NCBI RefSeq assembly: GCF_001194135.2 | Contig: NC_069008.1 | Location: forward strand, 210,799 to 262,141 | DNA: 51,343 nt | Direction of reading: 5' to 3' | DNA from: Octopus bimaculoides | Taxonomy: Eukaryota | Part shown: positions 455 through 51,343 of the stretch, piece after piece | Position numbering within the stretch: position 1 is the stretch's first letter | How the letters are laid out: each line of letters starts with the position of its first letter | Notes under the pieces: model-generated | Told to the model about the DNA's origin: nothing | The model's database searches: none | What the model saw: only the letters and a program-made list of their open reading frames with translations | Made by a program: the position numbers and the translations under genes

Positions 455-1078
455 GATATAAAAGCAGAGGCAATGATGATTGATTACATCAATATAAAGG
501 AAGACGATGTAATAAGGGCTATAGATGAAATGAACCCAAACTCAGCTACTGGCCGTGATGGATTCCCAGCTATCCTTCTAAAAGTATGTAAGCAAGTCCT
601 AGCAAGACCACTGCAGTCTCTCTTTCAGAGCTTCCTTGCAGCTGGCAAACTCCCAAGAAAACTGAAGGAGGGTAAAATATGCCCTGTTCATAAAGGAGGT
701 AGCAGAGCAGAGGCCAAGAACTACAGACCTATCTCTCTGATGTCGCACATCAGCAAGGTCATGGAACGAATAGTCAGAAAAAAAACTAATCGCCTTCCTT
801 GAAGAAAATGACTTGCTGCCTGACACCCAACATGGTTTCCGACTCAGCTCTTACAACACTATGACTGGGTGTTGAAACAGCTGCTCAACCACTCAAATGT
901 GGAAGTGATATATCCCGACTTTGCAAAGGCCTTTGATAAAGTCGATCATGGAATGATATGTCACAAACTGCATGATCTTAGCACACTTGGAAAATTAGGA
1001 GACTGGCTTCATGACTTTCTGAAGGATAGAAGTCAGGTGGTAGTAGCCAATGGGGCCACCTCCAATGACACACAAATA
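455..1078 (+). mobile_element. Decayed CR1/L2-type LINE reverse transcriptase fragment
   Basis: ORFs 473-802 and 869-1078 read NYRPISLMSHISKVMERIV ... TQHGF ... IYPDFAKAFDKVDH, which are RT motifs. The reading frame is broken by a frameshift and the sequence ends in (GT)n. Confidence 0.85.
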
Positions 1079-1080
1079 GT

Positions 1081-1119
<39 letters not shown>

Positions 1120-1730
1120 CGATGGGCTTCTTTCAGTTTCTGTGTACCAAAATCCACTGACAGGGCTTTGGTTGGCCCGAATGTATAATAGAAGATATTT
1201 GCCCAAGGGACCACACAATGGGACTGAACCCAAAGCCCTGTGGTTGGGAAGCAAGCTTCTTACCCAACAGCCATACCTCTGCCTCTCTATATTTTTACTT
1301 TCATCTATTTTCAGTTAAAATCTTCAGGGAAAACTTCAAAAACAAAAGGTAAATGATGTTGTTATTATTGTTCTTATTATTAATAGCTGGACACGCAAAA
1401 ATATTCAGAGATAATTTAAATATCGTTAAATGAATAGTTATTATTTAATCAGAATTGTTTAATTTGTGCTATTTTGGTTAATGAAAAACTCTTATTGTTT
1501 ATGTTACATTTATTAATGTGGAGGTGCAATAGCCCAGTGGTTAGGGCAGTGGACTTGCGGTCGTAAAACAACCAAACTTGAATGTCGAGCCTGACAGAGG
1601 CAAAGTGGCTGAGAACCCTTCGAGTGTTGGCCGTGCTGTCGAAACCTCGTTCAACCAATGAAATATTTATTGCAATCACATCGCACCCTCCGTCTTCTGT
1701 ATTAGCGTCGTCATCATCCTTATTATTGAA

Positions 1731-4396: not shown

Positions 4397-5156
4397 NNNN
4401 NNNNNNNNNNNNNNNNNNNNNNNNNNNNNNNNNNNNNNNNNNNNNNNNNNNNNNNNNNNNNNNNNNNNNNNNNNNNNNNNNNNNNNNNNNNNNNNNNNNN
4501 NNNNNNNNNNNNNNNNNNNNNNNNNNNNNNNNNNNNNNNNNNNNNNNNNNNNNNNNNNNNNNNNNNNNNNNNNNNNNNNNNNNNNNNNNNNNNNNNNNNN
4601 NNNNNNNNNNNNNNNNNNNNNNNNNNNNNNNNNNNNNNNNNNNNNNNNNNNNNNNNNNNNNNNNNNNNNNNNNNNNNNNNNNNNNNNNNNNNNNNNNNNN
4701 NNNNNNNNNNNNNNNNNNNNNNNNNNNNNNNNNNNNNNNNNNNNNNNNNNNNNNNNNNNNNNNNNNNNNNNNNNNNNNNNNNNNNNNNNNNNNNNNNNNN
4801 NNNNNNNNNNNNNNNNNNNNNNNNNNNNNNNNNNNNNNNNNNNNNNNNNNNNNNNNNNNNNNNNNNNNNNNNNNNNNNNNNNNNNNNNNNNNNNNNNNNN
4901 NNNNNNNNNNNNNNNNNNNNNNNNNNNNNNNNNNNNNNNNNNNNNNNNNNNNNNNNNNNNNNNNNNNNNNNNNNNNNNNNNNNNNNNNNNNNNNNNNNNN
5001 NNNNNNNNNNNNNNNNNNNNNNNNNNNNNNNNNNNNNNNNNNNNNNNNNNNNNNNNNNNNNNNNNNNNNNNNNNNNNNNNNNNNNNNNNNNNNNNNNNNN
5101 NNNNNNTCTTACTTCAACGTCGAGATGGTATAATTTCCTGGGAGAGAGATAATTTT

Positions 5157-5553: not shown

Positions 5554-5689
5554 TACTATTCTACTTTCTATGCTCTACGTTATATATTTTAATATTTAAT
5601 GGTGTTTTTATATATGTAAAGCATAATATGTTATACATGTATGTATATTATTATAATTGCTTTTTTTAAAAAATAGACANNNNNNNNNN

Positions 5690-14951: not shown

Positions 14952-15576
14952 CAGAAGGAATGGTCACAACTGGAATGTCCCAGATCAGATCTGTTTAATC
15001 AGATTTGATCTGGAGTTAAAGAACAACTCAAAGCCTAGTTTTTTTTTTTTGTTGGGTGGGGGTATGTCCAGTTTCCTTTTCTTTGCCTCTCAAAGGTATT
15101 CATTNNNNNNNNNNNNNNNNNNNNNNNNNNNNNNNNNNNACGTAACTCTTCTGATTTCAATCACACATTTCCTCCCATGATTTTCGCCCAAAGCACCACC
15201 AGGCTGCAGGTTTCTGGAAATTGGGGTAGTAAACTGACAGAGACTTTAGAAAGTTGGATAAAATGCCTTGCACTGGGAGTTCAAACCCTGCCTTGATCAA
15301 CTTTGCTTTCCCAGAGTGGATCCTTGCATTGCAAGTTCAACTCCTATCTTGATCAACTTTAATTTTCATCCTATCATCTTTTTTTTTTTAGATTTGCTTC
15401 AGTCATTTGACTGTGGCCATGCTGGGGCAGCACTGCCTTGAAGAATTTTTAGTCAAATGAATCGACACTTGTACTTATGTTTCATTAAGCCTGTCACTTC
15501 TATCAGTCTCGCTGCCTTCCTGCACTTAATAATAATAATAATGATAATAATAATAATATTTAACTCCTCCAGAAAG

Positions 15577-16022: not shown

Positions 16023-17807
16023 GTGATGCTGTGGAGAGCATGCCTCACATACAGGAAGGATACTCTGCAGATGAGGTTGGGAAAGTTAAATTCTTATTGT
16101 CACTGTTGTTGTTGGTGGTGTTAACGTGTTCATGTTACAGTTGACCCATAAATGTGTGTGTGCGTATGCTTGCTTCCCAACCACATGGTTCTGGGTTCAG
16201 TCTCACTGCATGGCACCTTGGGCAAGTTTCTTCTGCGATAGCTTTAGGCTAACCAAAACCATGTGAGTGGATTTGGTAGAGGGAAACTGAAAGAAGCCCA
16301 TTGTATATATTTATGTGTGTGTGTGTGTTTGCCTCACCTCATCACTTGACAACTGATGTTGGTGTGTTTATGGTGACTGAGCGGTTCAGCAAAAGAGTCC
16401 AATAGAATAAGTACTAGGCTTACAAAGAATAAATCCTGGGGCCAATTTGTTCGACTAAAAGCGGTGCCCCAGCGTGGCCACAGACACGCAGGCAAGCAGA
16501 CAGGTAGACAGGCAAGCAGACAGGTAGACAGGCAAGCAGACAGAGACAGACAGATGGGCAGACAGGCAGAAAAACAGACAGGCAGACAGATAGATAAGTA
16601 GACATAGAGGCACCTGATAGAAACATTAACCCCTCCCCCCCACCACCATAGATGTGTTGTGGTGACCTTCATTCATAATGTGGAAAGCATGTCTTGGTCA
16701 AAGGGAAATATTAAGAAGGGGTGGGGGATGGTGATGATGATGATAAGGACCGTGTTGGTGTCNNNNNNNNNNNNNNNNNNNNNNNNNNNNNNNNNNNNNN
16801 NNNNNNNNNNNNNNNNNNNNNNNNNNNNNNNNNNNNNNNNNNNNNNNNNNNNNNNNNNNNNNNNNNNNNNNNNNNNNNNNNNNNNNNNNNNNNNNNNNNN
16901 NNNNNNNNNNNNNNNNNNNNNNNNNNNNNNNNNNNNNNNNNNNNNNNNNNNNNNNNNNNNNNNNNNNNNNNNNNNNNNNNNNNNNNNNNNNNNNNNNNNN
17001 NNNNNNNNNNNNNNNNNNNNNNNNNNNNNNNNNNNNNNNNNNNNNNNNNNNNNNNNNNNNNNNNNNNNNNNNNNNNNNNNNNNNNNNNNNNNNNNNNNNN
17101 NNNNNNNNNNNNNNNNNNNNNNNNNNNNNNNNNNNNNNNNNNNNNNNNNNNNNNNNNNNNNNNNNNNNNNNNNNNNNNNNNNNNNNNNNNNNNNNNNNNN
17201 NNNNNNNNNNNNNNNNNNNNNNNNNNNNNNNNNNNNNNNNNNNNNNNNNNNNNNNNNNNNNNNNNNNNNNNNNNNNNNNNNNNNNNNNNNNNNNNNNNNN
17301 NNNNNNNNNNNNNNNNNNNNNNNNNAGGGTAAAATTAAAATGAGATGTTTGAGGGGCCCACCTGGGCCGTGATCTTGGATTGAAAAGGAGAAGCACCTGT
17401 AGCAAATTCTTCACCTTTGAAATGGACAATGGACTAATCCTTGCTTGAATCCCCTGAATTCTTTATTTCGATTTACTCTTTTTTACTTGTTTCAGTCATT
17501 TGACTGCGGCCATGCTGGAGCACCGCCTTTAGTCGAGAAAATCGACCCCAGGACTTATTCTTTGTAAGCCTAGTACTTATTCTATTGGTCTCTTTTTGCC
17601 GAACCACTAAGTTACGGGAACGTAAACACACCGGCATCGGTTGTCAAGTGATTGTGGGGGGACAAACACACACACACATATATATATATATATATGTATA
17701 TATATACATACATATACACACACACACACACACACGTGTGTGTAATTGAATGCATGTATATATATGTTTATATAGTCTGTTTATGCAATCTGATTTTTGC
17801 TTTGAAG

Positions 17808-19637: not shown

Positions 19638-20374
19638 TGATAATAATAATTATGATGATGATAATTGTCTATTATTCACAGTTTACCTTCTCTCTCTCTC
19701 TCGTCACCNNNNNNNNNNNNNNNNNNNNNNNNNNNNNNNNNNNNNNNNNNNNNNNNNNNNNNNNNNNNNNNNNNNNNNNNNNNNNNNNNNNNNNNNNNNN
19801 NNNNNNNNNNNNNNNNNNNNNNNNNNNNNNNNNNNNNNNNNNNNNNNNNNNNNNNNNNNNNNNNNNNNNNNNNNNNNNNNNNNNNNNNNNNNNNNNNNNN
19901 NNNNNNNNNNNNNNNNNNNNNNNNNNNNNNNNNNNNNNNNNNNNNNNNNNNNNNNNNNNNNNNNNNNNNNNNNNNNNNNNNNNNNNNNNNNNNNNNNNNN
20001 NNNNNNNNNNNNNNNNNNNNNNNNNNNNNNNNNNNNNNNNNNNNNNNNNNNNNNNNNNNNNNNNNNNNNNNNNNNNNNNNNNNNNNNNNNNNNNNNNNNN
20101 NNNNNNNNNNNNNNNNNNNNNNNNNNNNNNNNNNNNNNNNNNNNNNNNNNNNNNNNNNNNNNNNNNNNNNNNNNNNNNNNNNNNNNNNNNNNNNNNNNNN
20201 NNNNNNNNNNNNNNNNNNNNNNNNNNNNNNNNNNNNNNNNNNNNNNNNNNNNNNNNNNNNNNNNNNNNNNNNNNNNNNNNNNNNNNNNATATATATATAT
20301 ATATATATAAGCATTATTGTTCCTAAATCTCTCAAGGAGAGACATTCAGTAACAGTACTTTAAACTAATGTAGC

Positions 20375-25563: not shown

Positions 25564-26097
25564 GTAATTATAACTAATTCCTCTCTATTTTTACTATGTT
25601 CCTGCACAAGCTTCCCACATGTCTGCTTTTAATTTTTTATATATATATATTTTTCATTTTTTTGTCCCTTTTTAACCGTGTGAATGTGTATGAGCATATG
25701 TATATGTATGTGTGCGTGTGTATATATATGTATGCGTATATGAGTGTAAGACTGTGCCTAGTGCGACTTCCATGCACACGTCCCCATCATTCATATGGAC
25801 ATGCATATGTTTGTATATGTGTGTGGGTGTGAATGTATGCCTGTATATCTATAAGTGTCTAAATATATGTATTGTGTTACATGCATGCAAACACTTGTGT
25901 GTACACATATACATGNNNNNNNNNNNNNNNNNNNNNNNNNNNNNNNNNNNNNNNNNNNNNNNNNNNNNNNNNNNNNNNNNNNNNNNNNNNNNNNNNNNNN
26001 NNNNNNNNNNNNNNNNNNNNNNNNNNNNNNNNNNNNNNNNNNNNNNNNNNNNNNNNNNNNNNNNNNNNNNNNNNNNNNNNNNNNNNNNNNNNNNNNN

Positions 26098-28481: not shown

Positions 28482-28784
28482 GTGAGAATGCTACAGACAT
28501 AAAATTGTTGTTGTTTTTAACCCCAAGCAGGGACATATGTGGTTTACAAGTATATCCTGTGACACTGAACTGACAGACAATAACAGAACAGAAATTATAC
28601 ACCCCTACCCTGCTGCCTGCCCCCTGCAAAACGCATTAGGAAACTGTTGGGTGCTGATAAAAAAATGGGGAAAATTTCAAATTGTTTCCTTGTAGTGTGT
28701 GTGTGTGATTAGAGGTATATGTCAAAGCGAAGGCAACGAGTATCTCAAATCATTTAAATTCAATTAGGGTAAGGTGAATTTCAA

Positions 28785-31122: not shown

Positions 31123-33953
31123 TATGCTTAGGTAAATATATACAAATATAAGTCTATATATATATATATATATATANNNNNNNNNNNNNNNNNNNNNNNN
31201 NNNNNNNNNNNNNNNNNNNNNNNNNNNNNNNNNNNNNNNNNNNNNNNNNNNNNNNNNNNNNNNNNNNNNNNNNNNNNNNNNNNNNNNNNNNNNNNNNNNN
31301 NNNNNNNNNNNNNNNNNNNNNNNNNNNNNNNNNNNNNNNNNNNNNNNNNNNNNNNNNNNNNNNNNNNNNNNNNNNNNNNNNNNNNNNNNNNNNNNNNNNN
31401 NNNNNNNNNNNNNNNNNNNNNNNNNNNNNNNNNNNNNNNNNNNNNNNNNNNNNNNNNNNNNNNNNNNNNNNNNNNNNNNNNNNNNNNNNNNNNNNNNNNN
31501 NNNNNNNNNNNNNNNNNNNNNNNNNNNNNNNNNNNNNNNNNNNNNNNNNNNNNNNNNNNNNNNNNNNNNNNNNNNNNNNNNNNNNNNNNNNNNNNNNNNN
31601 NNNNNNNNNNNNNNNNNNNNNNNNNNNNNNNNNNNNNNNNNNNNNNNNNNNNNNNNNNNNNNNNNNNNNNNNNNNNNNNNNNNNNNNNNNNNNNNNNNNN
31701 NNNNNNNNNNNNNNNNNNNNNNNNNNNNNNNNNNNNNNNNNNNNNNNNNNNNNNNNNNNNNNNNNNNNNNNNNNNNNNNNNNNNNNNNNNNNNNNNNNNN
31801 NNNNNNNNNNNNNNNNNNNNNNNNNNNNNNNNNNNNNNNNNNNNNNNNNNNNNNNNNNNNNNNNNNNNNNNNNNNNNNNNNNNNNNNNNNNNNNNNNNNN
31901 NNNNNNNNNNNNNNNNNNNNNNNNNNNNNNNNNNNNNNNNNNNNNNNNNNNNNNNNNNNNNNNNNNNNNNNNNNNNNNNNNNNNNNNNNNNNNNNNNNNN
32001 NNNNNNNNNNNNNNNNNNNCATATACATATATATACATATACATATATATACATATACATATATATACATATACATATATATACATATATATACATATAC
32101 ATATATATACATATACATATATATACATATACATATATATACATATACATATATATACATATACATATATATACATATACATATATATACATATACATAT
32201 ATATATATATAAAAATATATAGGCACAGTCATGGCGGTGTGGAAAGAAGCTTGATTCCAAACCACATGGTTCGGGTTTCAGTCCCACTGCATGGCACCTT
32301 AGGCAAGTCATCACTTGACAACTGATGTTGGTATGTTTACGTCCCCATTATCTAGCTGTTTGGCAAAAGAGACTGATAGAGTAAGTTCCAGGCTTACAAA
32401 GAATAAATCCAGGGATCAATATCTTCGTGATTAAGGGGAGGTGAGTAGCACCGGTAATTCAGTGGTTCAATGAAAACTATTTGGGAATGAAATTGGGCCT
32501 AACTTTCATATACATCGAATTGTAGTAATAATTAGGTATATACAGGTATGCAAGAAAAATTCATTTTATAGATGCTTTACAATGCACAAATAAAATGGCC
32601 CTTACAATTAAGTGGATAATATTTAAGGCCAAGACACATGATGAAATATATATATATATATATATACAAGAAATAATATTTGTCTCTTCTAAGAGAAACA
32701 AAAAGGGTTTTATAGGACTTCAAAAGAATTGCTCAAATATAAATGAGACAGAGATGAAGAAGTATTGGTTGTGGAACAAACATTAAATCTGGGTCAATGA
32801 CTTTACATACAACCCCACCCCTCAAACATCTAATCATATATAAAAAAAAAATCACCATGGTTCCTAAACACATAAAAAAAAAATTATATTTACACATAAA
32901 ATCACAGAAGGTAAAAAGTATATAATTGAATAAAATACAAATAGAACGGCAAATCAAAAATGTTAAATATAAAGGGCTAAAAATTCAAAAACTATCAAAA
33001 AAACCTAATAGACAAATATAAAATAAGTAAAGGTAAAAATGAAAATAAAATAAATATCCACAGCTTAAAAAAGTTTTATCAGACAATTAAAATGTTTTTT
33101 TTTAATGTTTTTTTTTTATTTTTTTAAAATGGTTTTTTTTTTTGATTTTTTTAAAAAATATTTTTTGAAAGTTTTTTACTTCCCTCATACAAGTATGTCC
33201 TAAGTTCATAAATAAACAGACTTCCACAGGTCAAATTCAACATTCACATGTATCCATGGCCATTTCAGGAGCTCACCACCACCACAGTGTATTTTCACTG
33301 AAATGCNNNNNNNNNNNNNNNNNNNNNNNNNNNNNNNNNNNNNNNNNNNNNNNNNNNNNNNNNNNNNNNNNNNNNNNNNNNNNNNNNNNNNNNNNNNNNN
33401 NNNNNNNNNNNNNNNNNNNNNNNNNNNNNNNNNNNNNNNNNNNNNNNNNNNNNNNNNNNNNNNNNNNNNNNNNNNNNNNNNNNNNNNNNNNNNNNNNNNN
33501 NNNNNNNNNNNNNNNNNNNNNNNNNNNNNNNNNNNNNNNNNNNNNNNNNNNNNNNNNNNNNNNNNNNNNNNNNNNNNNNNNNNNNNNNNNNNNNNNNNNN
33601 NNNNNNNNNNNNNNNNNNNNNNNNNNNNNNNNNNNNNNNNNNNNNNNNNNNNNNNNNNNNNNNNNNNNNNNNNNNNNNNNNNNNNNNNNNNNNNNNNNNN
33701 NNNNNNNNNNNNNNNNNNNNNNNNNNNNNNNNNNNNNNNNNNNNNNNNNNNNNNNNNNNNNNNNNNNNNNNNNNNNNNNNNNNNNNNNNNNNNNNNNNNN
33801 NNNNNNNNNNNNNNNNNNNNNNNNNNNNNNNNNNNNNNNNNNNNNNNNNNNNNNNNNNNNNNNNNNNNNNNNNNNNNNNNNNNNNNNNNNNNNNNNNNNN
33901 NNNNNNNNNNNNNNNNNNNNNNNNNNNNNNNNNNNNNNNNNNNNNNNNNNNNN

Positions 33954-35830: not shown

Positions 35831-36343
35831 GGTGGAAGAATCGTCTGCACTCTGGGCAAAATGCTTAGCGACATTTCATCTGTCTTTACGTTCTGAGTTC
35901 AAATTCAATCAAGGTCGACTTTGCCTTTCATCCTTTCATGGTTAATGAAATAAGTACCAGTTATGCAATGGGGTCAATATAATCAACTAGCCCCTCCCCA
36001 CCAAAAACTTTCAGGCCTTGTGACTTTAGTAGAAAGGATTATTATTATTATTGTTGTTGTTGAATGAGGGAACAGCATATGCCCTCAAAGTGACACTAGT
36101 GTACAAATATGTGAAGCCCAATATACCCATCATGACCCCCACCCCGTCTGATAAGGGTACACCAGGCCACATGCATCACAACCATATGTGTGCAACATGG
36201 TGATCAAGGTAAACAGTACATGACTTTTCAGGTGGAACCAAGTTCAAACTTTCTTCAGGTTGAGTAGCCCAACCTACACAAAAACCCAACCTACTCAATA
36301 AGGGTTATTTCAGGATGATGAACAAGACACCTATTATTATTAC

Positions 36344-36380
<37 letters not shown>

Positions 36381-36613
36381 GCTATTATCATCATCATTAT
36401 TATTAAGGATGGTGAGCTGGCAAAACTGTTACCCTGCCAGTCAAAATGTTTAGTGGTATTTTTCCCATCCAAGTTCAAATACCGCCGAGGCCAACTTTGC
36501 CTTTCATCCTTTTAGGGGTCGATTAAATAAGTACCAGTTACACACTGGGGTCGATGTAATTGACTTAATCCCTCCCCAACAAATTTGAGGCCTTGTGCTT
36601 CCAGTAGAAAGGA

Positions 36614-36648
<35 letters not shown>

Positions 36649-36982
36649 GTTATTAAAGGTATCCAACATTCATTCCAGAAGTGTTTCATTACTGAAATAT
36701 CTTTTTCTGAGCATGGACTTTTGTAACACAAGCCTTATTTTCCCCTGTTGCTTCCATGTTTTCTAACCTGGAAGAAGTCAGTTATAAGAAAAGGGGTGAC
36801 AGGAATGGGACACTTTGGCAAAACAGATGCAGATGTTTGGATTCCATATATTGTTTTTTAATTATTCATGTTATTAATAGTCTTGTTCTTCTCCCAAAGG
36901 TTCTCTCCATTTTTTTTTCTTTCCTCATATCAAAAAAAAAAACAAACAACTTAAAATCTCATGTGGCCATCCCATCATAAAG

Positions 36983-37734
36983 CTACCAACAGGCACAATC
37001 TAAGGCTATCATGTTCTGTAGAGTGCCAATAAGGACTTCTTTTAGCTTGCTCTCATAAATAATTGGCAGGGGTGAGTATACAGAGGGGACACAATAAGAG
37101 TAGGGTATGTGTACATGGTTGTAGCCAGTTGACAGATGGTACTTGTTGCGCAAAAAAGCATGGTTGCTCACCCTCGAGTCTATGAGACTCAGACAATGGC
37201 CTGAGCAGTAACTTGCATTATAAACTTTTGGACGTAGGATCCAATTGAGGCGAATGTCAGAAAACCGAATCTGCCAAGGTTTCAAGCTGCAGTTGGTTGT
37301 ATTATGTCTCTTGAAGTTCCTGTTAAAAAGTTGGTCGGGTGAAGACGATGTGTTTTGCAATGACCGCCGCCTCCGCTTGTCCTCCTCCAGTGATGGCGCT
37401 TTTACTGTCGTCGGTATGTTTGGTGTTGTCTTGGTCGGGAAGTCCTGCATCGGCAAACCCCTTTCTGGTTCCTCACCTGAACTATTTGCTGTTTCAGCCG
37501 AAGTCTTGAATAACCTTTTGGACTTCCTGTTGTTCTGCTGCGACCTCTTGATGTCTGCTATGAACATGTCACTGTACATGATGAGCAGGGCATTGGGGTT
37601 CAGCCTGCAAGACTGGTGCTGTCCCCTGCGGCGGTGGATGACCTTGAAGGTGAGTTGCTCTGACCTCTCCGCAGTGGCTCGCTTGACGATGGCCGTCACG
37701 TTTATCACGAGGTTCTTCTTTGTCATAAACATCT
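36983..37734 (-). CDS. TGF-beta superfamily ligand, last exon: end of prodomain, KRRRR|S furin site and six-Cys mature domain
   Basis: C-x(27)-CSGHC ... YCVP ... NM...CAC cystine-knot pattern; NHA motif; pyrimidine tract plus ttgcag acceptor in phase 1. Confidence 0.95.
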
Positions 37735-37777
37735 CTGCAATGGAGGAAACAACAATAACAACAACAGCAATAATGAC

Positions 37778-37809
<32 letters not shown>

Positions 37810-40033: not shown

Positions 40034-40201
40034 TGGGTCGAACTATTGCATGTGTGGTTCGGACCCTTATATCAGGATAATGACAAACCCTTCGGGGTCG
40101 CTGTTTTATATTTAGAACCAGTTCAGAGCTGGATGTGACCGACAGGAATGATGTGTTCTGATTGGTGAATGTGAACTCCAAGAGCTTCCAATGGTGAAAA
40201 T
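40034..40201 (-). CDS. TGF-beta ligand middle exon, prodomain (FHHWKLLEFTF...HAIVRP)
   Basis: Minus-strand ttcctttgccag acceptor and gtaagt donor; 168 nt, phase 1 to 1; joins the flanking exons without stops. Confidence 0.8.
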
Positions 40202-40309: not shown

Positions 40310-41050
40310 CATCTTGACTCTCAAGCCACTACTGTGGAAGCTGGTGACGCTGAGGGGCATCACGCAAGAACTGGGATGTGGGACGAGCGTGTCTGCATAC
40401 GCTGACAATGTCACCATTGTAGTGTCTAGCCAGAAGGACATGGAGCTGGTTGGCGAAACACTGCAAGACTACAAAGCAGCAACAGGAGTGAAAATCAACT
40501 TGGAAAAGTCGGTGGGTTTGCGGCTCTGCACCTGGAGAAGCAAGCCCATGCTTGTGGGTCACTGGACCAACAGACCGGTTAAACTGCTCAGGGTCTGGTT
40601 CAGTCCAGACCTCCAAATGGAGAAGAACTGGGACGAGTTAACGGGTAGGGTGGCCACCCTAACCCTAACCCTAACCCTAACCCTAACCCAGCAATGGGCC
40701 AAGAGAAAGCTATTTCTAAAAGGTCGGGTTGAGGTAGTGAATGTGTACATTGTATCCGTCATCTGCTACTGTCTGACCGTCAGGCCTTGTCCCGACCCTA
40801 CCATCACAAAACTGGAATGCATACTCTTCTGCCTTTTGTAGAAGTGAAGCATTCCGGTGGTCAGGCGATCCATTTGCTGCTAACATTCGCTAAATGGAGG
40901 GCTGGGCATGCACTGAGACTGCAACAACTCCAGCATTCCATAGACGATAGTGAACAGGTGTGGTTGCCATTTGTTGAGCTGGCTGTGACCAGTGAGTTTC
41001 TGGGATGGATGATAATGACTACACCACATCCCAAAAATCTAGCACAGGTG
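40310..41050 (+). mobile_element. Decayed L1/Tx1-clade LINE reverse transcriptase fragment
   Basis: SAYADNV (YADD-like), KINLEKS, KLFLKGRVEVVN, GGLGM motifs. Confidence 0.85.
40657..40689. repeat. Interstitial telomere-type repeat (CCCTAA)5
   Basis: Five perfect CCCTAA units plus CCC inside the RT coding remnant. Confidence 0.9.
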
Positions 41051-42146: not shown

Positions 42147-42812
42147 NNNNNNNNNNNNNNNNNNNNNNNNNNNNNNNNNNNNNNNNNNNNNNNNNNNNNN
42201 NNNNNNNNNNNNNNNNNNNNNNNNNNNNNNNNNNNNNNNNNNNNNNNNNNNNNNNNNNNNNNNNNNNNNNNNNNNNNNNNNNNNNNNNNNNNNNNNNNNN
42301 NNNNNNNNNNNNNNNNNNNNNNNNNNNNNNNNNNNNNNNNNNNNNNNNNNNNNNNNNNNNNNNNNNNNNNNNNNNNNNNNNNNNNNNNNNNNNNNNNNNN
42401 NNNNNNNNNNNNNNNNNNNNNNNNNNNNNNNNNNNNNNNNNNNNNNNNNNNNNNNNNNNNNNNNNNNNNNNNNNNNNNNNNNNNNNNNNNNNNNNNNNNN
42501 NNNNNNNNNNNNNNNNNNNNNNNNNNNNNNNNNNNNNNNNNNNNNNNNNNNNNNNNNNNNNNNNNNNNNNNNNNNNNNNNNNNNNNNNNNNNNNNNNNNN
42601 NNNNNNNNNNNNNNNNNNNNNNNNNNNNNNNNNNNNNNNNNNNNNNNNNNNNNNNNNNNNNNNNNNNNNNNNNNNNNNNNNNNNNNNNNNNNNNNNNNNN
42701 NNNNNNNNNNNNNNNNNNNNNNNNNNNNNNNNNNNNNNNNNNNNNNNNNNNNNNNNNNNNNNNNNNNNNNNNNNNNNNNNNNNNNNNNNNNNNNNNNNNN
42801 NNNNNNNNNNNN

Positions 42813-44222
42813 CGGGTGATGTGGGTTATGGTCTTGTCACCCACATCGAAAATCAGGTGGTTCATGAAGGAGTCCTACCCAATGACTGGTGTAACAGCAC
42901 CATAGTCAACTGCTACAAAGGTAAAGGTGATGCCTTAGATAGAAATAATTACAGAGGTATCAAATTGTTGGATCAGGTGATGGATCAGTTAGGGAGAGGG
43001 TTATAACCCGACTAATTAGGGAGAGAGTTAGACTAGATGAGATGCAGTTTGGTTTGTACCAGGGAGAAGCACCACTGATGCTATATTTCTGGTAAGACAG
43101 CTGCAGGAGAAATACATAGCCAAAGATAAACTTCTGTACCTGGCTTTTGTTGACTTGGAGAAAGCCTTGGACAGGGTCCCCCAATCCCTTATTTGATGGT
43201 CAATGTGGAAACTGGGGATTGACAAATGGTTGGTGAAAGCTGTACAAGCCATGTACAGGAATGCTGTCAGTAAGGTGAGGGTTGGCAGTGAGTAAAGTGA
43301 AGAATTCCAGGTAGAAGTAGGGGTTCCCCAAGGATCAGTGCTCAGCTCCCGCTTGTTCCTCATAGTCCTCCAGGCAATAACAAAGGAATTCAAGACAGGC
43401 TGCCCCTGGGAGCTCCTTTATGCTGATGACCTTGGTCTTATAGCTGAATCACTTTCTGGACCAGAGACGTTCCAGGTATGGAAGCAAGGTCTAGAATCAA
43501 AGGACCTTAGAGTTAAACTAGCAAAAGTCTTAGTTAGCAGGAAGGCAGACAAATCGCAGATGTCTTCAGGTAGATGGCCCTCCTTGACCTGTAAAAAAAT
43601 ATCGTAGGCAGAAACTTCACAAGACACACTCAGCGTAAGCTTTGAACACACAAAAAGTGCAGCAATATCAGAGGAAGGCTAATAGGGAAAATGGTTTTCG
43701 TATGTGGAAGATGCACATGTATAATAAACACTGAAATGTACAGAAAATAGACTCCATCAACTGCCAGAGGGGCAAGCGAGAGGGAGTAGACAACTTCGTT
43801 TATCTAGGTGACCAGGTGAGTAGTGGAGGTGGATGCCCTGAGAGCAAAGCTGTTAGAATACGAATAGGCTGGCAACAAAGGACCTCTCTCTCAGAGTGAA
43901 AGGCAGATTGTAGGATGCATGTGTGTGAACAGTCGTGTTATACAGCAGTGGCACATGGGCTGTGACAGCTGAGGACATACAGAGGCTTGAAAGAAATGAA
44001 GCCAGTATGCTTCGCTGGTTGTGCAGTGTCAGTGTGCATGTTCGACAGAGTGTAAGCATCTTGAGAGAAAGGTTGAAGATGAGAGGCATCAGATGTGGTG
44101 TGCAAGGGAGACGACTGTGCTGGTATGGTCATGTGATGCGTATGGACGAGGACTGATGTGTAAAGAAGTGCCGATCTCTAACTGTGGAGGGGACCAGTGG
44201 TAGAGGTAGACCCTGGAAGACT
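42813..44222 (+). mobile_element. RTE-clade LINE, RT domain to C-terminus, decayed
   Basis: NYRGIKLL, MQFGF.PGRSTTDAIF, AFVDLEKALDRV, VGVPQGSVLS, LLYADDL, R.RRL.WYGHV.R, GRGRP. Confidence 0.9.
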
Positions 44223-51146: not shown

Positions 51147-51343
51147 GGCTTTTTGATAATAATCCTTTAATTAGTGGTCGGACAGTTTCCGTGGTAACAG
51201 TAGCAGTGGCGGCGGCGGCGCCAAGGCTAGCCAAGGGATCGTACTCCTCGACTAGGGTCTCCTCAATCTGTTTCACATACTCAAACAGGTCCAATATGTA
51301 CTGAGGGATCTTCTCCTTTTCGTCCTCCCGACTCCTTTGTGCC
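51147..51343 (-). CDS. TGF-beta ligand upstream prodomain exon, 5'-partial (…EKIPQYILDLFEYVKQ…TETVRPLIKGLLSKS)
   Basis: IPQYILDLF matches the TGF-beta propeptide PxYMLDLY motif, and TETVRP matches the xNTVRSF motif. gtaagt donor in phase 1. Confidence 0.85.

What the first reader, a model, noticed from the sequence alone, without database searches (positions are those of the whole stretch)
37094..37096. TGF-beta ligand whose dimerisation cysteine is one A-to-I edit away (TAT, Tyr)
Seen: the mature domain reads YSYCVP where the family has CCVP. The position of the inter-chain Cys is codon TAT on the minus strand, and the six knot cysteines are intact. Established: this Cys forms the covalent dimer and is naturally absent in GDF9, BMP15, GDF3 and Lefty. 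Coleoid cephalopods recode mRNA extensively by A-to-I editing, and UAU read as UIU gives Cys. Inference: ADAR could switch this ligand between a non-covalent form and a disulfide-linked homo- or heterodimer. The simpler alternative is a fixed loss of the Cys.
Basis: partly seen in the sequence, partly recalled or inferred. Interest (0 to 1): 0.8.

Follow-up and report, generated by a model that had tools for sequence, protein, structure and literature searches.

The report
Octopus BMP-like ligand lacking dimer cysteine
An octopus growth-factor gene of the TGF-beta family has replaced the cysteine that normally links its two subunits with a tyrosine, as many related ligands have, and nothing testable here suggests that RNA editing restores the cysteine.

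Summary
Minus-strand codon 37096..37094 is TAT (Tyr213). It aligns with the inter-chain (4th of 7) cysteine of BMP2 and activin, inside a full-length TGF_beta domain. The six knot cysteines and an RRRR furin site are intact.

The ORF is the last of at least three exons of a divergent BMP-like ligand. Exon 1 runs off the window end.

Octopus sinensis carries the same TAT. Cuttlefish orthologues carry TGT (Cys). So the octopus lineage made a single G-to-A change. The gene is under purifying selection (dN/dS 0.08 in the mature domain).

Loss of this cysteine is common. About 45 of the 150 closest representative proteins lack it, and five have Tyr. Every Tyr codon is one A-to-G change from Cys, so "one edit away" carries no information.

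Indirect tests for an ADAR site are negative:
- RNA folding is no better than shuffled sequence.
- No complementary partner stands out.
- The site has no extra flanking conservation.
- The cuttlefish mRNA contig matches its genome exactly.

Published tables suggest about 4-5% of TAT codons are detectably edited in neural transcripts, and far fewer elsewhere.

No octopus RNA was available, so editing is unsupported but not refuted. The best reading is a fixed loss giving a non-covalent ligand.

The parts
36983..37734 (-). Last exon (exon 3) of the ligand gene. It holds the C-terminal part of the prodomain, the furin site, the mature domain and the stop codon TAG (36985..36983).
   Evidence: ORF. 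Acceptor ttgcag|AG at 37735/37734. Same exon boundary in the cuttlefish genomic contigs L002 and L003. Pfam TGF_beta.
40034..40201 (-). Exon 2 (middle of the prodomain: ...FHHWKLLEFTFTNQNTSFLSVTSSSELVLNIKQRPRRVCHYPDIRVRTTHAIVRP...)
   Evidence: tblastn with the cuttlefish full-length protein P0154. AG acceptor and GTAAGT donor, in frame with exons 1 and 3. Collinear alignment to P0154. Lies in a block 92.7% identical to O. sinensis.
51147..51343 (-). 3' part of exon 1 (prodomain N-terminal helix region, ...KIPQYILDLFEYVKQ...). The start codon and signal peptide lie beyond the window end.
   Evidence: tblastn hit to P0154 residues 79-131. GTAAGT donor after 51147, and the splice to exon 2 is in frame.
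37364..37375 (-). Furin-type cleavage site RRRR (aa 120-123), followed by S124, the first residue of the mature ligand
   Evidence: Codons. Aligned with RHRR|S of the cuttlefish orthologues.
36986..37363 (-). Mature ligand domain, 126 aa, ending in CACW
37094..37096 (-). Codon TAT = Tyr213, at the position of the inter-chain disulfide Cys. TAT in O. sinensis, TGT in cuttlefish orthologues.
37091..37093 (-). Codon TGT = Cys214, the retained knot Cys of the 'CC' pair (TGC in O. sinensis)

Best explanation
The window holds most of a three-exon gene for a divergent BMP/activin-like ligand of the TGF-beta superfamily. The source is an Octopus species other than O. sinensis, probably O. bimaculoides.

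In the octopus lineage the codon for the inter-chain cysteine changed from TGT to TAT by one G-to-A transition, and the change became fixed. The translated protein therefore carries Tyr at that position. It keeps the six-cysteine knot and is cut from its prodomain at RRRR|S. I infer that it acts as a non-covalently associated homodimer or heterodimer, as the vertebrate Cys-less ligands GDF9, BMP15, GDF3 and Lefty do.

Shown here: the gene model, the domain, the codon in two octopus species and in cuttlefish-type orthologues, purifying selection, and frequent independent loss of this Cys among relatives. Inferred: non-covalent dimerisation, secretion and signalling. RNA editing is not needed to explain the codon, and no indirect sign of it was found.
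For: 1. Domain and cysteine pattern.

2. Gene model. GT-AG junctions join three exons in frame. The product is collinear with a 395-aa cuttlefish protein, P0154, taken from an mRNA contig.

3. Orthologue codons. The O. sinensis orthologue XP_036354387.1 is 90% identical and has TAT at the same codon on a syntenic contig. Cuttlefish orthologues have TGT. Run ERR12945500 is identified as Acanthosepion esculentum in bioRxiv 10.1101/2025.04.22.649952.

4. Selection. Between the window and O. sinensis, dN/dS is 0.14 overall and 0.08 in the mature domain: 15 synonymous against 5 non-synonymous differences. The Tyr-bearing gene is therefore maintained.

5. Relatives. Of the 150 best representatives, 101 have Cys and about 45 lack it: S 18, Y 5, H 5, T about 4, F 3, Q 3, R 2, N 2, L 1, K 1. 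These include the gastropod proteins Haliotis rufescens XP_046374713.1 and Gigantopelta aegis XP_041359991.1.

6. No sign of an ADAR substrate:
- The 301 nt around the site fold with z = 0.06, and the 885-nt exon plus UTR with z = 0.5.
- The best duplex partner within 2.8 kb falls at the 28th percentile of all exon segments.
- Divergence within 50-100 nt of the site is 4.0-4.5%, against 5.3% for the whole mature domain.

7. The cuttlefish mRNA contig L004 is identical to genomic contigs L005-L013 over exon 3 and the 3' UTR.
Against: No octopus RNA data could be examined. Sub-stoichiometric or tissue-specific editing at 37095 therefore cannot be excluded.

The ancestral base was G, and the 5' neighbour of the A is U, which ADARs tolerate (my knowledge). 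Sites where editing restores an ancestral residue are reported to be edited more often than other sites (PMC8382921).

Synonymous divergence is somewhat lower in the mature domain (dS 0.21) than in the prodomain part (dS 0.385). The numbers are small and I did not test the difference for significance. It could hint at an RNA-level constraint.

Non-covalent dimerisation is inferred by analogy and not shown. The structure prediction failed (pLDDT 33).
Confidence: 0.85

Rival explanations
1. Regulated or restorative A-to-I editing. ADAR converts UAU to UIU in a meaningful fraction of transcripts. The ancestral Cys is re-created, and the ligand toggles between a non-covalent and a disulfide-linked dimer.
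For: The ancestral codon was TGT, so the edit would be restorative, a class reported as enriched among edited sites (PMC8382921). TAT is kept in two octopus species. Y-to-C recoding does occur in O. bimaculoides: 976 TAT sites are listed in table ST6 of PMC8382921.
Against: Local and exon-wide folding is no better than shuffled sequence. No complementary partner stands out. Flanking conservation is not elevated, and the adjacent codon differs between the two octopus species (TGT against TGC).

The base rate is about 4.5% of TAT codons with any detectable editing in neural transcripts (976 of 21,569; ST6 and ST7 may use different denominators). In squid, 91% of robust recoding is neural, and 94% of recoding sites in non-neural samples are edited below 1% (PMC9068888).

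The same Cys has been lost repeatedly in relatives, including gastropods. The cuttlefish mRNA of the orthologue shows no consensus-level A-to-G change.
Confidence: 0.03
2. Incidental low-level editing. The A at 37095 is deaminated in a few per cent of transcripts as part of the general coleoid editing background, with no functional consequence.
For: The background rate of detectable editing at TAT codons in neural transcriptomes is a few per cent. Most recoding sites are edited at below 1-10%.
Against: It has the same lack of dsRNA signal as the regulated-editing rival. Expression in neural tissue is unknown. No octopus transcript of this gene was found in the protein collection, where the cluster holds only two genome-derived members.
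Confidence: 0.08
3. Decaying gene. Loss of the inter-chain Cys marks a ligand that is no longer functional in octopuses.
For: Public models in both octopus species are truncated to the last exon and lack a signal peptide. No octopus transcript was found in the collection.
Against: The reading frame is intact across three exons with canonical splice sites. The furin site and all six knot cysteines are intact in two species. dN/dS is 0.08 in the mature domain. The truncation is an annotation artefact: exons 1 and 2 exist.
Confidence: 0.03

Closest known systems
Vertebrate Cys-less TGF-beta ligands (GDF9, BMP15, GDF3, Lefty1/2)
   Same: They have a TGF_beta cystine-knot domain with six cysteines. 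The fourth of the canonical seven, the inter-chain disulfide Cys, is replaced. GDF9- and BMP15-like proteins ('SCVPY...CTCR') appear among the hits with Ser at this position. By analogy the dimer is non-covalent (my knowledge of these families).
   Different: They are not orthologous to the octopus gene. The vertebrate proteins score far below the cephalopod and other mollusc relatives, so the loss is independent. The replacement here is Tyr, not Ser. The C-terminus is CACW rather than CxCR/S/H.
Cuttlefish orthologue (Acanthosepion esculentum and related Sepia; proteins P0002, P0152, P0154, P0155) and P0171 from an unidentified ENA assembly
   Same: The last-exon boundary and phase are the same. 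The furin site context matches (R-x-R-R|S-x-x-N-x-SSS). The motif SNHAFLRNKYH and the unusual terminal CxCW are shared. Identity is 44-54%, including the prodomain.
   Different: These proteins keep Cys (TGT) at the inter-chain position. They lack a roughly 40-aa Ser/Thr/Pro/Glu-rich insertion that octopus has upstream of the furin site.
BMP2/4, BMP5-8 and activin beta-A mature domains (solved structures 1ES7, 2R52, 1NYS, 4MID)
   Same: They give the best matches among solved structures (E 1e-16 to 1e-18 with the profile). The alignment is full-length with all knot cysteines in register.
   Different: No single subfamily stands out: BMP6, activin A, BMP2 and BMP3 all score alike. The automatic name 'BMP8B-like' is a nearest-hit label, not orthology. 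The first Trp of the W-x-x-W receptor-epitope motif is replaced (RLNW), and the inter-chain Cys is absent.
Coleoid A-to-I recoding sites (for example Y-to-C sites catalogued in PMC8382921)
   Same: A genomic A at the second position of a TAT codon in a coleoid coding exon. The edit would restore an ancestral residue.
   Different: There is no RNA evidence and no dsRNA or conservation signature. The gene is a secreted ligand, not shown to be expressed in neural tissue.

Membership tests
TGF-beta superfamily ligand | C-terminal TGF_beta domain (Pfam PF00019) above the curated threshold | tested here: met
   68.9 bits against a cut-off of 27; profile positions 1-104 of 104.
TGF-beta superfamily ligand | Six cystine-knot cysteines in the pattern C...CxGxC...C...CxC | tested here: met
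   C148, C176-S-G-H-C180, C214, C246-A-C248, in register with BMP2 and activin.
TGF-beta superfamily ligand | Prodomain followed by a dibasic/furin R-x-x-R cleavage site | tested here: met
   RRRR|S at aa 120-124. The prodomain spans exons 1-3 and is collinear with the cuttlefish full-length protein. Pfam's propeptide model gave no hit.
TGF-beta superfamily ligand | N-terminal signal peptide | not testable with these tools
   Exon 1 runs off the window end at 51343. The cuttlefish orthologue P0154 starts with a hydrophobic N-terminus, MYKNKVTTVIICVCISLLFSFTLTKA.
TGF-beta superfamily ligand | Seventh cysteine forming the inter-chain disulfide (canonical members) | tested here: not met
   Tyr213 (TAT) occupies the position. 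This feature is known to be dispensable in GDF9, BMP15, GDF3 and Lefty (my knowledge). It is absent from about 45 of the 150 nearest representatives.
Cys-less, non-covalent TGF-beta ligands (a functional class, not a clade) | Inter-chain Cys replaced while the knot stays intact and the gene stays under selection | tested here: met
   (dN/dS 0.08 in the mature domain).
Cys-less, non-covalent TGF-beta ligands (a functional class, not a clade) | The dimer is held without a disulfide (monomer on non-reducing SDS-PAGE) | not testable with these tools
   Needs expressed protein. The AlphaFold model was unusable (pLDDT 33).
GDF9/BMP15, GDF3 or Lefty orthogroups | Closest similarity to that orthogroup | tested here: not met
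   The nearest relatives are cephalopod and then other mollusc proteins. GDF9- and BMP15-like proteins rank below position 55 with E around 1e-9.
A-to-I (ADAR) recoding site | Genomic A read as G in cDNA of the same individual | not testable with these tools
   No octopus transcript of this gene is in the collections. The protein cluster has only two genome-derived members. Published site lists (tables S4 and S5 of PMC8382921) are not held.
A-to-I (ADAR) recoding site | The site is embedded in double-stranded RNA | tested here: not met
   Fold z-scores are 0.06 (301 nt) and 0.5 (885 nt). The best duplex partner is unexceptional, at the 28th percentile. Thermodynamic prediction is an imperfect proxy for real substrates.
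A-to-I (ADAR) recoding site | Raised sequence conservation flanking a conserved recoding site | tested here: not met
   Divergence is 4.0-4.5% within 50-100 nt, against 5.3% for the mature domain. The adjacent codon differs between the two octopus species.
A-to-I (ADAR) recoding site | Expression in tissue with high recoding activity (nervous system) | not testable with these tools
   No expression data were available here. Robust recoding outside neural tissue is rare (PMC9068888).

The most novel reading that the evidence does not exclude
In octopus the G-to-A loss of the inter-chain cysteine codon is compensated, or exploited, by A-to-I editing at 37095. A tissue- or stage-dependent fraction of the ligand then regains the disulfide. 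RNA editing would set the covalent state, and with it the stability, range or partner choice, of a secreted morphogen.
Probability: 0.03. Interest if true: 0.75.

Novelty: new member of a known kind. Interest (0 to 1): 0.2.

Why it matters
As it stands, this is one more independent case of a TGF-beta family ligand giving up its inter-chain disulfide. This time it is in the octopus branch of a cephalopod-specific, BMP-like orphan ligand whose cuttlefish orthologue keeps the cysteine. The pair forms a natural Cys/Tyr comparison for asking what the disulfide contributes to ligand stability and heterodimer choice.

It also corrects the public gene models, which are truncated to the last exon.

If the editing idea were true, it would be the first case of RNA editing controlling a structural disulfide in a secreted signalling protein. 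Nothing found here raises that above the low background expectation.

Tried and rejected
- Structure prediction. The mature domain was modelled with the only alignment the tool would accept (4 sequences). The result was pLDDT 33 and unusable, so no fold search was run.

- Protein search with P0002. One search timed out. It was repeated with an alignment.

- Octopus transcripts or other octopod orthologues. Two word-indexed searches and one exhaustive HMMER search found only the O. sinensis and window proteins in that cluster. An RNA-DNA comparison at the site was therefore impossible.

- Published editing-site lists. The per-site tables of PMC8382921 are not held. The O. bimaculoides temperature-editing paper was not found in the library.

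- Species of the orthologue runs. A direct search for ERR3431203, ERZ21867824 and SRR8281686 found nothing. The neighbouring accession ERR3431204 is Mytilus coruscus. I rejected it as evidence for the source species, because run ERR12945500, which carries the same protein cluster, is named as Acanthosepion esculentum. The species behind P0171 stays unknown.

- Exon 1 boundary. The tblastn extension 'FILKFS' was rejected as the end of exon 1. The GTAAGT donor after 51147 gives the in-frame splice and matches the cuttlefish exon end.

- A weak tblastn match at 28578..28706 (E = 1.8) was treated as noise.

- Subfamily assignment by a profile search of solved structures gave no clear winner.

- A literature search for a cephalopod TGF-beta ligand inventory found nothing useful.

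Full report
**1. Observation**

The minus strand of 36983..37732 is an open frame of 249 codons. Pfam's TGF_beta model (PF00019) matches residues 147-248 across the entire profile at 68.9 bits, against a cut-off of 27.

Alignments to solved BMP2, BMP2/6, activin A and other chains place the octopus 'Y-S-Y-C-V-P' under the family's 'x-x-C-C-V-P'. Tyr213 falls under the first Cys of the pair, the inter-chain disulfide residue.

Codon 213 is TAT at 37096..37094. Its middle A is 37095, a T on the + strand. The mature domain has exactly six cysteines (148, 176, 180, 214, 246, 248), and RRRR|S lies at residues 120-124.

**2. What the gene is**

The ORF is not a whole gene. It starts just after a polypyrimidine tract and a ttgcag|AG acceptor at 37735/37734.

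An exhaustive HMMER search of 1.84 billion representatives found one close relative besides O. sinensis. This is P0002, at E 1.9e-44 and 46% identity. Its 90% cluster contains a 395-aa full-length protein, P0154, from an RNA-derived contig of run SRR8281686.

Using P0154 in tblastn, I located two further exons:
- Exon 2 at 40201..40034.
- The 3' part of exon 1 at 51343..51147.

With GTAAGT donors and AG acceptors, the three pieces join in frame into a 371-aa partial protein. It is collinear with P0154 from the 'LPKYMLDLYE' prodomain helix to the C-terminus. The start codon and signal peptide lie beyond the window.

The public models, XP_036354387.1 'bone morphogenetic protein 8B-like' in O. 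sinensis and the window's own 249-aa protein P0151, are truncated to the last exon.

A profile of the octopus and cuttlefish proteins matches BMP6, activin A, BMP2, BMP3 and BMP7 about equally well, at E 1e-16 to 1e-18. The nearest named relatives are mollusc orphans auto-labelled 'dbl-1-like' or 'BMP4-like'. I therefore call it a divergent BMP/activin-like orphan ligand. Its orthogroup is marked by the terminal CxCW, seen in only two of the 150 best hits, P0001 and P0002.

**3. The codon in relatives**

The O. sinensis contig is syntenic with the window at about 88-93% nucleotide identity. It has TAT at the same codon, and the next codon differs synonymously (TGT in the window, TGC in O. sinensis).

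The cuttlefish-type orthologues have TGT-TGT, read from genomic contigs L002 and L003. Contigs carrying P0152 come from run ERR12945500, which a Sepia officinalis genome preprint identifies as Acanthosepion esculentum short reads. The species of P0171 (79% identical to P0002) is unknown.

More distant relatives mostly have Cys. The ancestral state was therefore Cys (TGT), and the octopus lineage made one G-to-A transition.

**4. Is the Tyr-bearing gene functional?**

Between the window and O. sinensis, dS is 0.29 and dN is 0.041, giving dN/dS of 0.14. In the mature domain there are 15 synonymous and 5 non-synonymous differences, giving dN/dS of 0.08. The frame, the furin site and the knot cysteines are intact in both species. 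A pseudogene is unlikely.

**5. How unusual is the loss?**

Among the 150 best representatives, 101 have Cys at this position and about 45 do not. The replacements are Ser 18, Tyr 5, His 5, Thr about 4, Phe 3, Gln 3, Arg 2, Asn 2, Leu 1 and Lys 1.

These include vertebrate GDF9- and BMP15-like sequences. They also include gastropod proteins with Ser: Haliotis rufescens XP_046374713.1 and Gigantopelta aegis XP_041359991.1.

Ser, Tyr, Phe and Arg are the single-nucleotide neighbours of Cys codons. Tyr is thus an ordinary outcome of mutating this codon. Any Cys-to-Tyr change necessarily leaves a codon 'one A-to-G away' from Cys, so that property carries no evidential weight.

**6. Indirect tests for an ADAR site**

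- Structure. The 301 nt centred on the site fold at -71.2 kcal/mol, against -71.5 +/- 4.4 for shuffles (z = 0.06). The 885-nt exon plus proximal UTR gives z = 0.5.
- Partner sequence. I scanned 2.8 kb of pre-mRNA for the best duplex partner of the 41-nt segment around the site. It scored -31.1 kcal/mol, within the distribution for all exon segments (mean -29.6, sd 4.0; 28% do as well or better).
- Long complementarity. The only long complementarity nearby is between (AUU)n in intron 2 and (AAU)n downstream of the stop codon. Both lie more than 400 nt from the site.
- Flanking conservation. Divergence from O. sinensis is 4.0% within 50 nt and 4.5% within 100 nt, against 5.3% for the mature domain. 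The constraint reported around conserved recoding sites is absent.
- The orthologous transcript. The cuttlefish mRNA contig L004 is identical to nine genomic contigs over exon 3 and the 3' UTR. The only two mismatches sit at the exon boundary, where the alignment runs into intron. This excludes majority-level editing of that transcript in that sample, but not low-level editing.

**7. Base rates from the literature**

In Shoshan et al. 2021 (PMC8382921), table ST6 lists 976 edited TAT (Y-to-C) sites for O. bimaculoides. Table ST7 lists 21,569 TAT codons in the aligned ORF set. That is roughly 4.5%, with the caveat that the two tables may not share a denominator. The same paper reports a higher incidence at 'restorative' sites.

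Albertin et al. 2022 (PMC9068888) report for squid:
- 54% of recoding sites in neural samples are edited below 1%.
- 94% of recoding sites in non-neural samples are edited below 1%.

For a secreted developmental-type ligand with unknown and probably low neural expression, my estimates are as follows. They are judgement, not computation:
- About 3% for functionally relevant editing.
- About 8% for incidental low-level editing.

**8. What could not be done**

No octopus RNA-derived sequence of this gene exists in the searchable collections. Per-site editing tables are not held. The direct test is therefore left for RNA-seq mapping. The AlphaFold run with the permitted four-sequence alignment failed (pLDDT 33), so no structural statement is made beyond sequence alignment to solved structures.

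**9. Verdict**

The feature is real. It is best explained as a fixed, lineage-specific loss of the inter-chain cysteine in an otherwise well-conserved orphan BMP-like ligand. By analogy with GDF9, BMP15, GDF3 and Lefty, the ligand would dimerise non-covalently.

The RNA-editing switch remains a legitimate and cheap-to-test idea, because the ancestral base was G. But it has no positive support, and several indirect indicators are negative.

The finding is a new member of a known kind, and its interest is low to moderate.

Noticed in passing
window 36983-37734, 40034-40201, 51147-51343 (minus strand); L001 7706-8452: The public protein models for this gene are truncated to the last exon. They start at an internal Met with no signal peptide (XP_036354387.1 in O. 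sinensis, and the window's own 249-aa protein). Two upstream exons exist, about 2.3 kb and 11 kb further up, and exon 1 continues beyond the window end.
   Followed up: yes
window 37748-37808 versus 36332-36401 and 36613-36655: Trinucleotide microsatellites of opposite polarity bracket the last exon: (AUU)n in intron 2 and (AAU)n downstream of the stop, read on the mRNA strand. The arms are 38-61 nt and 82-97% complementary. In pre-mRNA they could form a long A-U duplex of the kind edited ubiquitously in UTRs and introns. They lie more than 400 nt from codon 213.
   Followed up: partly
window 37378-37510 (minus strand; aa 75-119 of the ORF): Octopus has a roughly 40-residue Ser/Thr/Pro/Glu-rich insertion just upstream of the furin site that the cuttlefish orthologues lack. 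It is also the most divergent stretch between the window and O. sinensis.
   Followed up: partly
window 36986-36988 (Trp249) and the cuttlefish proteins P0002, P0152 and P0171: The ligand ends in CxCW. A terminal Trp after the last knot Cys occurs in only two of the 150 best hits (P0001 and P0002). It looks like a signature of this cephalopod orthogroup. The first Trp of the usual W-x-x-W motif is also replaced (RLNW, or QMTW in cuttlefish).
   Followed up: partly
window 40314-40841 (+), 869-1318 (+), 43338-44156 (+): Reverse-transcriptase fragments lie in intron 1 and elsewhere. The RVT_1 matches are weak, at E 1e-5 and 5e-3, below Pfam's cut-off. Many short interspersed repeats are shared with the O. 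sinensis contig.
   Followed up: partly
window 4397-5106, 5680-5689, 15105-15139, 16763-17325, 19709-20288, 25916-26097, 31177-32019, 33307-33953, 42147-42812: There are nine runs of N (assembly gaps, 4,236 bases in all), mostly flanked by dinucleotide and trinucleotide microsatellites. One gap lies in intron 1 of the ligand gene.
   Followed up: no
L004 1-1606 (cuttlefish mRNA contig, run SRR8281686): The cuttlefish transcript contig carries about 1.6 kb upstream of the start codon. This is an unusually long 5' leader, or retained or unspliced sequence. It was not examined.
   Followed up: no
window exon 3, mature domain against prodomain part (comparison with L001): Synonymous divergence from O. 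sinensis is lower in the mature domain (dS 0.21) than in the prodomain part of the same exon (dS 0.385). The counts are small (15 against 25 synonymous differences). I did not test the difference for significance, and it is unexplained.
   Followed up: partly
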